From positions 2,747,454 to 2,811,453 of the forward strand of contig NW_002060946.1 in the NCBI RefSeq assembly GCF_000150275.1: a stretch of 64,000 bases of DNA. Direction: 5' to 3'. Positions 12,252-21,300 of the stretch are shown piece by piece. The notes under the pieces were generated by a model. The model ran no database searches. It was not told the origin of the DNA and saw only the letters and a list, made by a program, of their open reading frames with translations. The stretch is from Trichoplax adhaerens. Lineage: Eukaryota > Animalia > Placozoa. Numbering within the stretch: position 1 is the first letter of the stretch; the number at the start of each line of letters is the position of its first letter. The position numbers and the translations under genes were made by a program.

Positions 12252-13753
12252 TTATCTACCGCACAAGATAAATGAATGAGGGCTTTCATTTAGAGTAGTA
12301 ATTTTGTTTGAGTTTGTTAGCTCTTCCCAGCTCATGTTACTGCCTAGTATTGAAGAATAAATATTCTATTTATTTAAAGTGTTTTAGAAATTATATACGT
12401 ACGTCGTAAGGTGGCACAAAGTCTTAAAGATACTTCAACAAATATTCTTGTATAACTGTACTTTGTAATTATGTAAGGTAATATGAAGGAAGAAATACCT
12501 TATAGTTTTAAATCAAATGTCTAATTAGAGCCATTATAAGTAGACAAAATATATATTTTCGTTTAAATTAACTTAAAACCATATTATTTTACTAAACCAA
12601 GGTTCCCTATTCGTGGATAATTATTTTAACGATGCAAATCGTTCTGATGGATTATTAACAACTACTAAATACAAATTAGATATGGATAGATTACAAAATT
12701 ATTTTATAAGTAGCCCGAAAGGTAATCGGACAAACATTCTGATATCATAAATTTACTCAAATTTTATTCGATTACTGCATAATCGGCTAAAGCACTTAAA
12801 CAATAATGATTCTGCTTTCATCACTATGTAGCTTTCAATACTATAATAGATGTAGCCCAAATTTCACTGGATACTTTTATATTTACTACTTAATAAGGTA
12901 GCTGATGATGAATAATACTAGAACTAGCTGGTACGGAATACTATACTGTAATATGAATGTTAATCCCATTCATTCAAATGTGATGATAAACAATTCATAT
13001 GAGATACGATAACGCAAAGATTTATTATTTAGCTTGTGTTTAACGATAATTTACCGTCATCGTTCAATCTTGAAGATGAGTTTACAGCTTGTGCATGATA
13101 AATCCAGAAATGGCCGTTATTGCAAGATTGCATACATGACTTACATGGCATGGTAACATGATATCCTACAATATTTCCGCTAATGCAATGATGCAAATGA
13201 TAATGAATTACTTTACTATCCGAAAAATCACTAATTTTAATGGATTGATTATTCTATCTATTCAAATACAGTACCATATCGAACAGGCCATATCTTGAAT
13301 TCGACAATAACATTTATTAGTAGTATAGTCATCTCCAACCAACTGAATTGCACTGTAGAGAAAATTTATCAGCAGATCGATAAGTATTTGGTAATACTCG
13401 TTAGTTATCGTTGATATAATACTGCACACGTTTAGTAAAACTGTAGTATTTAAATAAATAGTTTATTGATTGCGGTAACTGCTATTGCTATTGCTATTAT
13501 TTTAGAAAATAATTAATTGAAAGATAGATACTATTTTAGAGAATTTTGATGACGGAATTCTATTGATAAATGGTTCTCCTTACTTTGCTAGTACACGATC
13601 AGTCGAGTAAAGTTCCACTTTGGAATCTGCTAACAAGATTGCTTTCATTCCTCGGTTACATACCCGATTACTACATAAGTAGCATTCCAATAGAATAACT
13701 TCCTTATTGATCAACGGTTGATCTACTGATCTGCTATAGAAATTTCTTGGCAT
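12252..13753 (-). CDS. FAM72: FAM72 family protein (154 aa, 4 coding exons)
   Basis: Exons 13753-13584, 13352-13275, 13179-13055 and 12343-12252 splice (GT-AG) to [52 protein letters not shown]...[46 protein letters not shown]...GSNMSWEEL...LCGR*. RGMKAxLLAD, CGNIVGYHV and SCNNGHFW are FAM72 signatures. Confidence 0.93.
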
Positions 13754-14460
13754 ATCGTCGACAATATGATTGTATTCAACTTTGTACTTATGGCGACGTA
13801 TCGTGTACTATCGCTTTGCTAATGTTAATTACAAATAAATTGCTATAGTATTGTGACCTTGTTGATAATTTTCGACGTATAGCAGATACGTCTAGGCAGC
13901 TAGTGGATAGTATGTTACTACACGATCACAAATAGTATCCGTTACCGAAATATTACTGCTGATGATGCTTCCTGCTAGAATCTTGGTTTAATATGGCACA
14001 GGCGGTAACTTAATTTTTTTTTTTTTTAATTTTTTGAAATGAGTACAACAGGCGATGATGTTTACCAGTCACAATGACGTCTTGCTGAGTTAAAATAGTT
14101 TTATTTACCTCAATCATGAGACACATGATTAAGCGTATGTCGAAAATCGAACGAGAAATACTATTTTTGCACGTGTCAAAATTCAAAATTTTTAGAACGG
14201 TTATTTTCTATTGTTTATATAGATGACGTATCATTCCGTGGGCCAATGAAATTATCAGTAGCAATACGCTTGGCGCTTAGAACAGTCTAGCTACTCTTTC
14301 ACCCGATTTGGACCTTGGTACAGTATGGTAAACTACAGTCAAAGGTAAAATACTATGCAGTACACACCCCGCCTCTACAGAGTACAGACGAGACATAATG
14401 GACACTCATGAACATTTAGACAGTTCTTCTAGTACTCGTAAGAGTAATTGAAATAGTTTC

Positions 14461-19000: not shown

Positions 19001-21300
19001 GCTTCCAGTGTAGAGCTGTCAGTAACATCATCTTTATCTTCACTAGATAACAAGCCGTAACTAGTTAATGATTCTAAATGTTGCCGTAAGGAATTTTTTG
19101 CCTGTAAGAACAATAAAAATTTTACGATTTCAGTAGATATTTCAGTCTTAAAATATTAAAGAAATTGTTATCGTTATCAGTATGCAACGTATGCCGCAGA
19201 AATAGCTATTATATTACTTCATCAACTATATCTTTTAATCCCCGTCTATTTCTATCAGATTCTAGATATCGAGAATCCAATTCATTAAATACTTCGGCAC
19301 CATTGCATTCAATTTCTTTCACCTTGTCAAATTTGTCGAATAAAAGAATTACATACATTGTTTTCTTGGACAATTTGTATAATAAGAATATCCTATTTAT
19401 GTATATACTAGTGCAAATACATACCTCGTCATCACCTTGAGGGATAAACTCTAGATCTTCAAATGTTTCAAAAATTTGATGATTATCATTGAGAAATTTT
19501 TTCCCTACATCTTCTTTTCTAAATTGATCGATATCTTCCGAGTAAGACTCAATTAATTTAAAGTTGCAATTATGCATTTTTTTCTCCATATTATTACACG
19601 AGGCAAAAATCTGGCTAACTTCTTTTTGATAGCCTAAATCTAAGCTCTATAAAGTGAATAGTCATCGTTATAGGAGTATATCAGTGCTAATTTTCATATT
19701 TAAAAACTCTTGACTCATTATTATGTTATTCTATGTTCAATTGTAATTACTAGTTTAGTTGCGCTATAAGAATATAACATATGATCTCTTTTTCAGTTAC
19801 TTGTACATACAATATGTATACAGAAAAGATGCAATAGCGGCTATGGTAATTATTTATAAAAACTAACTGAAAGCAGTTCGGGAATTCCAGTTTCAAAGTA
19901 AGCCCTAAAGAGAGCATTAGCGGCGGATAAATTCAGGATGTAGTCATTTCTAGCATTGATACTCTTTAACTTTGCAGCAGAACATTTTTGCATAGTCTGA
20001 TAGATTCAATAAAAAGTGCTTCAAAAAATTAATATGATAAATAACTTAAGTCAATATTTTTCCATAGAATAAATTTATTATCGAAGCTGAGTAGATGGCG
20101 TTTGCATACCTTATGTATGATACGGTCACTTTTTTTACGACTTTGCCTTCTCATAATTCCAGGATTTAGAGTAGATTTATTTTGCTTTTTAAAGAGTTTA
20201 CGCTGAACATTTTCGCTTTGAGCTTGACAGATGTGATAATTTTTCATAGACTGTACGCAGAAGAAAAATCCTCAGTACTGAATATGGGTGTAAATTTATC
20301 GTTACCTTTCTAATATTAACATTTTAAAGAAGAATTGGTTTGAATCATCTAAAATGATAGAATTATATATAGTTATTGCAAATTACCCCTAATAATCCTT
20401 GGAGCACACGCATAAACTCTTCATGTGATAGATTTTGAATTTCTCGACACTAAGTAATTAATCATTGCAAATAAATATACAACCTAAATAATGCTCATTA
20501 TAAAATTGTTGTCTATTCCTTTAATTTTAACGTTTCAAAACTATATGATTTATATTCGATAGGAAAAATTTAATGCATGAAATTCAAAAGATGATGATGT
20601 ACTTTTTTGCTAATGTAATGTATTTCCTTTCCAAGTAGGCCAATTTGACCAACATAGAGAGCATTCAGTTTTTTATAATGTGACGTACGAAGTTTACACC
20701 TCGATTTATCGACACTAAGTTGTTTATTGAATACATCGTAGACGCAAGCTGCATCTTTCCTATACGAATTCAATAAGTAAAAAAATATAGTGTCAGTTTC
20801 TGGGTTAACCTATTGTAGAATTATTTATCTTGGAAAATTAAAATATATATAGATTGCAAGTATGCTACTAATTATGATGATCTCAGTCGGTGAACTTTAA
20901 CAAAAGCCATATTGTGTATTTAAGATGTTGCTAATTACACTATATTGGTATGATATAGTTGTTGTTATTATAAAATATACAATATGCCACAAGTTTGCAA
21001 ACATGATACATATTTACTCTATATGCAAGCGGCATGCCATTACTGCAGATATCATATTGCTCGTATAATATATCTATTCTCGCATATTGGCGACAGATCA
21101 AAAGTAGCCGTCGCTAAATTTGACTTACTTGGCGATTTTACTCTTAAATTTATCTGCTAATTTCTCTAACATCCGCGAATATTCGATTTCAATTTCATTC
21201 TTTCTCTTAAAGTACTCTTGTATATCACCTAATACAGCAATTTCACTATCAGCTCGAAATTCGATAGCCTTGGCTTGATCAGTTAATCGTTGACGTATGT
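16067..21300 (-). CDS. SRGAP: SLIT-ROBO RhoGAP family protein (F-BAR, RhoGAP, degenerate SH3); N-terminal exons lie further upstream
   Basis: F-BAR IRQRLTDQ...QEYFKRKNEIEIEYSRMLEKLADKF and KSINARNDYILNLSAANA; RhoGAP FGGEV...IPLVVESCIKYI, GLDLQGIFRLSGS, AAGVLRCYFRELPTPLFP, NKMTAANLSLVFGPTL; SH3-like AVAKRDHE...ELSFKKGD; stop at 16067. Candidate upstream micro-exons at 22208-22191 and 25345-25333 are uncertain. Confidence 0.9.

What the first reader, a model, noticed from the sequence alone, without database searches (positions are those of the whole stretch)
12252..21300. FAM72 sits directly beside srGAP: the vertebrate SRGAP2-FAM72 pairing may predate neurons
Seen: a complete 4-exon FAM72 gene, invisible in the ORF track, starts 2.3 kb downstream of the srGAP stop on the same strand. 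Established: human FAM72A-D are head-to-head with SRGAP2 paralogues, a pair discussed mainly in vertebrate brain evolution. Inference: the adjacency is far older, and here it is tandem rather than divergent, so the shared bidirectional promoter would be a later (or lineage-specific) inversion. If the host is a placozoan, the pair exists in an animal without neurons.
Basis: partly seen in the sequence, partly recalled or inferred. Interest (0 to 1): 0.85.

Follow-up and report, generated by a model that had tools for sequence, protein, structure and literature searches.

The report
Placozoan srGAP–FAM72–SRPK gene neighbourhood
In this placozoan-like genome a real, expressed FAM72 gene lies just downstream of the only srGAP gene, and the same two genes sit head-to-head in an annelid, a brachiopod, a crinoid and amphioxus, so the "vertebrate brain" SRGAP2–FAM72 pair is an old animal gene neighbourhood.

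Summary
A four-exon FAM72 gene (minus strand, CDS 13753-12252, 154 codons) lies 2,313 nt downstream of the stop of an F-BAR + RhoGAP + SH3 gene on the same strand. Spliced RNA contigs from two organism labels show all three FAM72 introns. An independent DNA contig bridges the two genes, so this is not a scaffold chimera.

- **Age of the pair:** it is far older than vertebrates. In Lingula, Owenia, Anneissia and Branchiostoma, FAM72 sits head-to-head with an FCH+RhoGAP(+SH3) gene, with start codons 397-553 bp apart. A review states that non-vertebrates lack the pair.
- **Age of the divergent arrangement:** it is therefore at least bilaterian, not a vertebrate novelty.
- **Where the pair is absent:** three anthozoans, two sponges, a ctenophore and Priapulus show no srGAP within 10 kb of FAM72.
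- **Open points:** the Trichoplax tandem pair is probably, but not certainly, homologous to the bilaterian pair. Which orientation came first is unresolved.

New here: FAM72 is also next to SRPK in Trichoplax, Amphimedon and three anthozoans. Only this locus has srGAP, FAM72 and SRPK together.

The scan has not reported this on other DNA. Exons were searched one by one; no joined protein model was used.

The parts
13584..14002 (-). FAM72 exon 1: 5'UTR reaching at least 14002, ATG at 13753, ends at 13584 in phase 2 with donor GTAAGG
   Evidence: Pfam PF14976 E=1.4e-11; RNA contigs X16 13584-14002 and X19 13584-13801 with the joint 13584|13352
13275..13352 (-). FAM72 exon 2 (78 nt)
   Evidence: Pfam E=5.5e-4; RNA joints on both sides; aligns to family columns with C-x-C and the I-x-D-x-x-C motif
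13055..13179 (-). FAM72 exon 3 (125 nt), the most conserved, zinc-binding core
   Evidence: Pfam E=1.1e-19; 360 proteins at E<=0.001 in the representative library; RNA joints
11632..12343 (-). FAM72 exon 4: CDS 12343-12252 (stop TAA), then a 3'UTR to about 11632; AATAAA at 11678
   Evidence: RNA joint 13055|12343; X16 contig runs 368 nt beyond 12000; poly(A) signal; conserved Trp and C-x-R end
14003..15088 (.). Gap of about 1.1 kb between the srGAP mRNA 3' end and the FAM72 mRNA 5' end; presumed FAM72 promoter
   Evidence: RNA contig ends; no Pfam, Rfam or tRNA hit; only unspliced low-depth contigs here, in runs of uncertain type
15089..16066 (-). srGAP 3'UTR (about 0.98 kb), AATAAA at 15113
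   Evidence: RNA contigs X16 15089-16698 and X19 15118-16698; poly(A) signal
16067..16698 (-). srGAP last coding exon: divergent SH3 domain and low-complexity tail, stop at 16067
   Evidence: Pfam SH3_2 1.3e-7 and SH3_1 3.2e-6; intron 16699-16849 shown by RNA joints
17219..18329 (-). srGAP RhoGAP-domain exons, with the G-I-F-R arginine-finger motif
   Evidence: Pfam PF00620 on three exon pieces, profile positions 11-41, 47-85 and 119-146 in order; translation
19853..21300 (-). srGAP F-BAR exons (FCH exon 21300-21128; a later helix exon within 20005-19853)
   Evidence: Pfam FCH 3.2e-9; the only PDB hits are SRGAP2 F-BAR, residues 22-77 (E=1.1e-10) and 238-275 (E=0.01)
21790..21838 (-). Candidate first coding exon of srGAP (ATG 21838, donor GTATTG, phase 1, fits the acceptor at 21301); tentative
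   Evidence: Read from sequence; weak likeness to the M..K.KEKE..EF..VK first exons of the bilaterian srGAPs; no RNA laid here
6813..10749 (+). SRPK gene, tail-to-tail with FAM72 (stop codons 1.5 kb apart; mRNA 3' ends nearly abut at about 11.5-11.65 kb)
   Evidence: PDB best hits SRPK2/SRPK1; exon-by-exon collinear tblastx with the kinases next to FAM72 in Dendronephthya, Nematostella and Amphimedon; poly(A) signals

Best explanation
This is a conserved gene neighbourhood, not a new kind of element. The window carries three separately transcribed genes in the order srGAP (minus), FAM72 (minus) and SRPK (plus). FAM72 is a small Yippee-like zinc-binding protein that is older than animals. srGAP is the genome's only F-BAR + RhoGAP + SH3 gene. 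The srGAP-FAM72 adjacency is most likely inherited from the common ancestor of placozoans and bilaterians. In bilaterians the two genes are divergent, with about 0.4-0.55 kb between start codons. That leaves room only for a shared bidirectional promoter, which would make the pair hard to separate and would explain its survival into vertebrates (inference). In Trichoplax srGAP lies on the same (5') side of FAM72 but points the same way. Each gene has its own poly(A) signal, and a gap of about 1.1 kb should hold FAM72's own promoter (inference). One inversion of srGAP separates the two layouts, and its direction is unresolved. The FAM72-SRPK adjacency is older or at least wider: it occurs in a sponge, the placozoan and anthozoans. 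Shown: the gene models, the splicing, the contiguity, the neighbours in 11 other species, and absence within 10 kb in seven of them. Inferred: homology of the placozoan adjacency, promoter sharing, and the ancestral three-gene block.
For: The FAM72 model is proven by Pfam, RNA splice joints in two organism labels, tiling of the family alignment, and intron positions shared with Lingula, Owenia, Anneissia and Bolinopsis. The srGAP domains lie in the order FCH, RhoGAP, SH3 on one strand. This is the only locus in the genome where FCH and RhoGAP hits coincide. Two F-BAR exons hit only SRGAP2 in the PDB. An independent DNA contig (X4 record 17, 12968-15974) bridges FAM72 and the srGAP 3'UTR. FCH+RhoGAP(+SH3) genes lie head-to-head with FAM72 in Lingula, Anneissia, Branchiostoma belcheri and Owenia, and their start codons sit exactly at the reported gene ends. 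SRPK lies next to FAM72 in Dendronephthya, Nematostella, Acropora and Amphimedon (collinear tblastx for Dendronephthya, Nematostella and Amphimedon; Acropora rests on its split-kinase Pfam pattern alone). Human gene orders in papers fit a split block: TMEM5(RXYLT1)-SRGAP1 at 12q14 (PMC4525753), SRPK3...ARHGAP4 within 411 kb at Xq28 (PMC5356410), and SRGAP2-FAM72 at 1q32 (PMC7957592). RXYLT1 flanks FAM72 in Anneissia and amphioxus.
Against: No cnidarian, sponge or ctenophore that I could read has srGAP within 10 kb of FAM72, and Priapulus lacks it too. Homology of the placozoan adjacency therefore needs at least one loss and one inversion. The orientation differs from every bilaterian case. The flanks were limited to 10 kb, so srGAP could lie a little further away in those species, or be absent from them; I did not check. 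No formal permutation test of synteny was run. srGAP orthology rests on architecture and on partial exon hits, not on a tree. The SH3 domain is divergent (best PDB hit GRB2). The organism name is coded in my tools.
Confidence: 0.75

Rival explanations
1. Coincidence: srGAP and FAM72 became neighbours independently in the placozoan lineage, and only the bilaterian head-to-head pair is a conserved unit.
For: All six other non-bilaterians read lack the adjacency. The orientation differs from bilaterians. With about 11,500 genes (from memory of the published Trichoplax genome paper), random gene order would still give roughly one chance-shared adjacency between two genomes, and more if both genes lie on one ancestral linkage group.
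Against: For a named pair the chance of adjacency is about 2 in 11,500. srGAP lies on the same (5') side of FAM72 as in bilaterians. The third gene, SRPK, is linked to a srGAP paralogue (ARHGAP4) at human Xq28 (PMC5356410). Trichoplax is known (from memory) to keep many ancient linkages.
Confidence: 0.15
2. One reading: tandem srGAP>FAM72> is the ancestral layout, and the head-to-head layout with a shared promoter arose by inversion on the bilaterian stem and then became locked.
For: Head-to-head pairs with about 0.5 kb between start codons should be hard to break, so a move from tandem to head-to-head followed by locking fits strong bilaterian conservation. It also makes loss in cnidarians easy.
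Against: The event count is the same as for the reverse polarity (one gain, one inversion, one loss). No outgroup shows either layout. Priapulus shows that the locked pair can still be broken.
Confidence: 0.4
3. The neighbour is not an srGAP orthologue but another F-BAR-containing RhoGAP, so the likeness to SRGAP2-FAM72 is only nominal.
For: The RhoGAP and SH3 exon pieces hit generic RhoGAP and SH3 structures best. The ESM Atlas features name only generic FCH and RhoGAP clusters. No tree was built.
Against: The FCH-RhoGAP-SH3 order is the srGAP architecture. It is the same Pfam set as the FAM72 neighbours in Lingula, Owenia and amphioxus. Two F-BAR exons hit SRGAP2 and no other F-BAR protein in the PDB, collinearly. 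It is the only FCH+RhoGAP locus in the genome.
Confidence: 0.05
4. Assembly chimera or contamination joins two unrelated pieces of DNA.
For: None found; the window does have an N gap, but far away (about 61.3 kb).
Against: The DNA contig of a different organism label spans 12968-15974 at over 99% identity. In all, 20 runs from 7 studies hold the stretch.
Confidence: 0.01

Closest known systems
Vertebrate SRGAP2-FAM72 divergent gene pair (the '|-SRGAP2-FAM72-| master gene' of Heese and co-workers; PMC7957592, PMC12672016)
   Same: The same two gene families are immediate neighbours. FAM72 has four exons, as stated for human in PMC7957592; intron positions were compared among invertebrates only. 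srGAP lies on the 5' side of FAM72.
   Different: Here the genes are co-oriented (tandem) with separate poly(A) sites and a gap of about 1.1 kb between transcripts, not head-to-head across about 4 kb. The host is a placozoan-like animal. The literature says that species other than vertebrates lack the pair, which contradict.
Invertebrate bilaterian srGAP|FAM72 head-to-head pairs found here (Lingula anatina, Owenia fusiformis, Anneissia japonica, Branchiostoma belcheri)
   Same: The same gene families and the same relative position.
   Different: In those species the orientation is divergent, with 397-553 bp between start codons. The far neighbour is RXYLT1 in the two deuterostomes, not SRPK.
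FAM72-SRPK adjacency in Amphimedon and anthozoans
   Same: SRPK lies on the 3' side of FAM72. The layout is convergent in Amphimedon exactly as here.
   Different: Those genomes show no srGAP within 10 kb. In hexacorals a bZIP gene lies between the two, and SRPK is co-oriented with FAM72.
Ancient metazoan microsynteny blocks (Irimia et al. 2012, PMC3514665)
   Same: Unrelated genes are kept adjacent across phyla, often because of shared or interleaved regulatory DNA.
   Different: I could not check whether this pair is in their lists, because no supplement is held. The regulatory cause is untested here.

Membership tests
FAM72 (Pfam PF14976, now named YPEH2ZP) | Significant match to the family profile over its length | tested here: met
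   Exons 1-3 match profile positions 5-42, 47-71 and 72-116 in order. Exons 1 and 3 are above the 27-bit cut-off on their own.
FAM72 (Pfam PF14976, now named YPEH2ZP) | Conserved Cys/His zinc-binding columns, the C-N-N-G-H core, the C-terminal Trp and the C-x-R end | tested here: met
   Exon-by-exon alignment with 11 family members (invariant columns).
FAM72 (Pfam PF14976, now named YPEH2ZP) | Four-exon structure with shared intron positions | tested here: met
   RNA joints. The same exon limits are seen in Lingula, Owenia, Anneissia and Bolinopsis.
FAM72 (Pfam PF14976, now named YPEH2ZP) | Binds UNG2 and promotes its degradation (PMC12223117) | not testable with these tools
   No assay was possible and no complex prediction was run.
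srGAP / ARHGAP4 family | N-terminal F-BAR, central RhoGAP and C-terminal SH3 in one gene | tested here: met
   Pfam FCH, RhoGAP (three collinear pieces) and SH3 on one strand in that order. One mRNA joining all of them was not shown; only the last intron is covered by RNA.
srGAP / ARHGAP4 family | F-BAR closer to srGAP than to other F-BAR proteins | tested here: met
   Two exons hit only SRGAP2 chains in the PDB, at residues 22-77 and 238-275. Two other F-BAR-region pieces gave no hit.
srGAP / ARHGAP4 family | Catalytic arginine finger in the RhoGAP domain | tested here: met
   G-I-F-R-L-S-G in the exon at 18173-18042.
srGAP / ARHGAP4 family | Placement inside the srGAP clade in a phylogeny | not tested
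   This needs the joined spliced protein and full-length srGAP sequences. The joined step was left out, and the length window of the protein search excluded exon-sized queries.
srGAP / ARHGAP4 family | SH3 domain with the canonical aromatic proline-binding surface | tested here: inconclusive
   Pfam SH3 hits are present, but the usual A-L-Y-D-Y and W-W positions are not recognisable in the translation, and the best PDB hit is GRB2, not an srGAP SH3.
SRGAP2-FAM72 divergent pair with shared promoter | The two genes are immediate neighbours | tested here: met
   2,313 nt from stop to ATG, with nothing recognisable between.
SRGAP2-FAM72 divergent pair with shared promoter | Head-to-head orientation across one short intergenic region | tested here: not met
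   Both genes are on the minus strand here. The feature is met in Lingula, Owenia, Anneissia and B. belcheri.
Ancient conserved microsynteny | Adjacency shared by distant phyla more often than chance allows | tested here: inconclusive
   Four of five invertebrate bilaterians share it. The placozoan case is a single tandem instance, and none of six other non-bilaterians has it within 10 kb. No permutation test was run.

The most novel reading that the evidence does not exclude
srGAP-FAM72-SRPK (with RXYLT1 joining in deuterostomes) is an ancestral animal gene block. Only Trichoplax still keeps all three together. Sponges and anthozoans keep FAM72-SRPK, and bilaterians keep srGAP|FAM72 locked by a shared promoter. 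After the vertebrate genome duplications each human srGAP paralogue kept a different old neighbour: SRGAP2-FAM72A, SRGAP1-RXYLT1 and ARHGAP4...SRPK3. The block would then be held by regulatory entanglement of a proliferation gene (FAM72) with a cytoskeletal GAP, long before any role in brains.
Probability: 0.4. Interest if true: 0.55.

Novelty: new variant of a known kind. Interest (0 to 1): 0.45.

Why it matters
The SRGAP2-FAM72 pair is widely discussed as a vertebrate, brain-linked 'master gene' whose human duplications shaped the cortex. One review states that species other than vertebrates lack it (PMC7957592). The results here show that the divergent pair, with only about 0.5 kb between start codons, already existed in the bilaterian ancestor. 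A tandem version also exists in an animal without neurons. This moves the question from 'why did vertebrate brains invent this pair' to 'what general constraint has kept a proliferation gene and a Rho-GAP together for over half a billion years'. That constraint is probably a shared promoter. The results also offer small, tractable promoters (annelid, amphioxus) and a natural uncoupled control (Trichoplax) for testing it. For genome evolution in general it is one more ancient microsynteny, of which hundreds are known, so the surprise is moderate.

Tried and rejected
- **tblastx of the window's srGAP region** against the srGAP-bearing flanks of Lingula, Anneissia and Branchiostoma found nothing. 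Those 9.5 kb hold only the short first exon and a long intron, so this is no evidence either way.
- **PDB searches** with the F-BAR extension piece and one more F-BAR piece found nothing. The RhoGAP and SH3 pieces hit only generic relatives.
- **ESM Atlas features** gave only generic FCH and RhoGAP clusters.
- **The 933-aa kinase beside Lingula FAM72** looked like a possible SRPK, but its C-terminal exon is of another kinase type and shows no tblastx match. I rejected it.
- **RXYLT1 and the nearest Glyco_transf_90 gene** are not at this locus in the window's genome. RXYLT1 is on another scaffold and Glyco_transf_90 is 1 Mb away.
- **Inverted repeats** around srGAP that might mark an inversion: only two weak AT-rich pairs.
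- **The bacterial-type promoter and terminator scan** is irrelevant here and was at or near chance level.
- **CHR, CCAAT and E2F-like words** in the gap are too few and too short to mean anything.
- **Montipora FAM72** gave only a transcript contig, with no neighbours.
- **The supplement of Irimia et al. 2012** is not held. One broad literature search returned no paper with FAM72 in invertebrates.
- **A placozoan FAM72 protein in the databases:** the searches listed none. The best identity to exon 3 was 69%, and no placozoan name appeared. Records of the window's own genome may be hidden, so 'unannotated' is not established.
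Full report
**What is in the sequence**

The window is AT-rich eukaryotic DNA, about 31-33% G+C. It is one piece of a 105.6-Mb assembly of 1,414 contigs. Earlier notes of this scan call the genome Trichoplax adhaerens. The size and contig count fit what I remember of that assembly, but run and organism names are coded in my tools, so the name is not verified independently.

On the minus strand, three stop-free stretches match Pfam PF14976, the FAM72 family, now labelled YPEH2ZP. 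Reading the DNA gives a four-exon gene:
- exon 1: ATG at 13753, ends at 13584
- exon 2: 13352-13275
- exon 3: 13179-13055
- exon 4: 12343 to the stop at 12254-12252

The coding sequence is 465 nt, or 154 codons. It is the only FAM72 locus in the genome.

**RNA and DNA support**

The stretch 12000-17000 is held by 20 public runs from seven studies, under two organism labels.
- RNA contigs of X16 (organism A) and X19 (organism B) carry exactly the three predicted joints: 13584|13352, 13275|13179 and 13055|12343. All are GT..AG on the minus strand.
- The FAM72 transcript runs from at least 14002 to about 11632. An AATAAA lies at 11678.
- The upstream gene's mRNA ends at 15089-15118, just after an AATAAA at 15113. 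Its last intron, 16699-16849, is also confirmed.
- A DNA contig from organism B spans 12968-15974. It bridges FAM72 and the neighbour's 3'UTR, so the adjacency is not an assembly artefact.
- No Pfam domain, tRNA or Rfam family lies between the genes.

**The FAM72 gene is a normal family member**

The four exons, given separately by reference, tile an alignment of 11 FAM72 proteins from cnidarians, sponges, a ctenophore, bilaterians and a fungus. Every conserved Cys/His column, the Trp of exon 4 and the C-x-R end are kept. Homologues match the three conserved exons collinearly at about 50-75% identity. Intron positions are the same as in Lingula, Owenia, Anneissia and Bolinopsis.

FAM72 is older than animals. 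Many chytrids and Mucoromycota have it, and it also occurs in protist transcriptome sets.

**The neighbour is the genome's srGAP**

Upstream on the same strand lie, in order:
- an FCH exon (21300-21128)
- three collinear RhoGAP pieces (18173-17219), with the G-I-F-R arginine finger
- an SH3 exon with a low-complexity tail that ends at the stop at 16067

Two F-BAR exons hit only SRGAP2 among all PDB chains, at residues 22-77 and 238-275. Of the four FCH loci and roughly two dozen RhoGAP loci (36 exon-level matches) in the genome, only this one combines both domains. A plausible first coding exon lies at 21838-21790, but no RNA was laid there. The SH3 domain is divergent. A phylogeny was not possible with the tools and rules, so orthology rests on architecture, uniqueness in the genome and the F-BAR hits.

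**Is the adjacency shared?**

[quoted passage not shown] Another paper treats the pair as a vertebrate divergent pair (PMC12672016).

I fetched the genomic surroundings (10 kb each side) of FAM72 in 11 other species.

| Result | Species | Detail |
|---|---|---|
| Head-to-head with an FCH+RhoGAP(+SH3) gene | Lingula anatina | 435 bp between start codons |
| | Owenia fusiformis | 460 bp |
| | Anneissia japonica | 397 bp |
| | Branchiostoma belcheri | 553 bp |
| No srGAP within 10 kb | Priapulus | |
| | Nematostella | |
| | Acropora | |
| | Dendronephthya | |
| | Amphimedon | |
| | Sycon | |
| | Bolinopsis | |

In the four head-to-head species the reported gene ends are the start codons themselves. 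The first exons read M..K.KEKE..EF..VK, which from memory resembles the srGAP N-terminus.

The divergent pair is therefore at least as old as the bilaterian ancestor. The Trichoplax pair is the only non-bilaterian instance I found, and it is tandem.

**A second, wider neighbourhood**

The gene tail-to-tail with FAM72 in the window (plus strand, 6813-10749) is an SRPK kinase. The kinase next to FAM72 in Dendronephthya, Nematostella and Amphimedon matches it exon by exon. Acropora has the same split-kinase Pfam pattern.
- In Amphimedon the two genes are convergent and 324 bp apart, the same layout as here.
- In anthozoans SRPK points the same way as FAM72. In the two hexacorals (Nematostella, Acropora) a bZIP gene lies between the two.
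- Lingula's flanking kinase is not an SRPK.
- In the two deuterostome invertebrates the far neighbour of FAM72 is RXYLT1.

Human gene orders printed in papers fit a block that was split after genome duplication:
- TMEM5 (RXYLT1) next to SRGAP1 at 12q14 (PMC4525753)
- SRPK3 and ARHGAP4 within one 411-kb segment of Xq28 (PMC5356410)
- SRGAP2-FAM72 at 1q32 (PMC7957592)

This reading is an inference. In the window's own genome RXYLT1 is on another scaffold.

**How likely is homology of the placozoan pair?**

For a named pair among about 11,500 genes (from memory), chance adjacency is about 2 in 11,500. Genome-wide, about one chance-shared adjacency is expected between two genomes with random gene order, against the hundreds of conserved ones reported for animals (PMC3514665). 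The same side of FAM72 is occupied in both cases, and SRPK supplies an independent link to a human srGAP paralogue.

Against homology stand the different orientation and the absence in all six other non-bilaterians, which requires one loss and one inversion. I put homology at about 0.8 and coincidence at about 0.15.

Polarity cannot be decided. Tandem-first and head-to-head-first need the same number of events.

**How it works**

In bilaterians the two start codons are so close that one bidirectional promoter must serve both genes (inferred from distance; not assayed). That is the simplest reason for the pair's persistence.

In Trichoplax the genes are separate transcription units, each with its own poly(A) signal, and FAM72's promoter should lie in the gap of about 1.1 kb. 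Faint unspliced contigs in that gap come from runs of uncertain type and may be DNA. The adjacency there is either neutral retention in a slowly rearranging, compact genome, or it is held by regulatory DNA shared with srGAP's 3' end. Nothing here tests that.

**Housekeeping**

I fetched no vertebrate or human contig. Mammalian FAM72 proteins appeared only as rows in protein hit lists, and a few, whose species I did not look up, were printed as protein sequences.

**Verdict**

This is a new variant (tandem, placozoan) of a known gene pair. It comes with a correction to the literature, because the pair is bilaterian-wide, and with a new three-gene context. Interest is moderate.

Noticed in passing
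window 6813-10749 (+) with 12252-13753 (-); L011 10001-14096; L006 10001-21147; L009 10001-20779; L014 10001-21705: FAM72 and SRPK are neighbours in the window, in the sponge Amphimedon (convergent, 324 bp apart) and in three anthozoans. I found no paper that mentions this microsynteny.
   Followed up: partly
L004 and L008 (FAM72 at 10001; RXYLT1 at about 18.9-19.2 kb, minus strand): In the crinoid and in amphioxus the order is srGAP | FAM72 | RXYLT1. In human, TMEM5/RXYLT1 is listed next to SRGAP1 at 12q14 (PMC4525753). This suggests differential loss after the vertebrate genome duplications.
   Followed up: partly
window 16510-16698 (-): The srGAP SH3 domain is divergent. The usual A-L-Y-D-Y and W-W positions are not recognisable, and its best PDB match is GRB2 rather than an srGAP SH3.
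   Followed up: partly
L003 14332-14472 and 15386-15496: Lingula has a second, partial copy of FAM72 exons 3 and 4 (91% and 86% identical at protein level) a few kb downstream of the annotated gene.
   Followed up: no
proteins P0001 (1,747 aa, ENA metagenome contig of 59 kb) and P0021 (962 aa): These are proteins made of 15-20 tandem copies of a motif like FAM72 exon 3 (about 30-40% identical). Their origin is unknown.
   Followed up: no
L017 2378-9581 (-) and 10001 (+): In Priapulus, FAM72 is head-to-head with a UPF0020-domain gene instead of srGAP. The promoter partner has been swapped.
   Followed up: no
window about 27600-28800: Both strands give long open frames full of repeated T-V-Q-Y / C-T-V-Q words, in a region of raised G+C (0.40). 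It is probably a tandem repeat or a repeat-derived element. There was no Pfam hit on the neighbouring pieces.
   Followed up: no
window 21900-33400: About 11 kb upstream of srGAP contains no recognisable protein domain in eight pieces tested.
   Followed up: partly
window about 61340-61500: A run of N (an assembly gap).
   Followed up: no
window 45853-46218 (-) and 50923-51246 (+): Exons of an enoyl-CoA hydratase gene and of an M1 aminopeptidase gene. They are ordinary neighbours.
   Followed up: no
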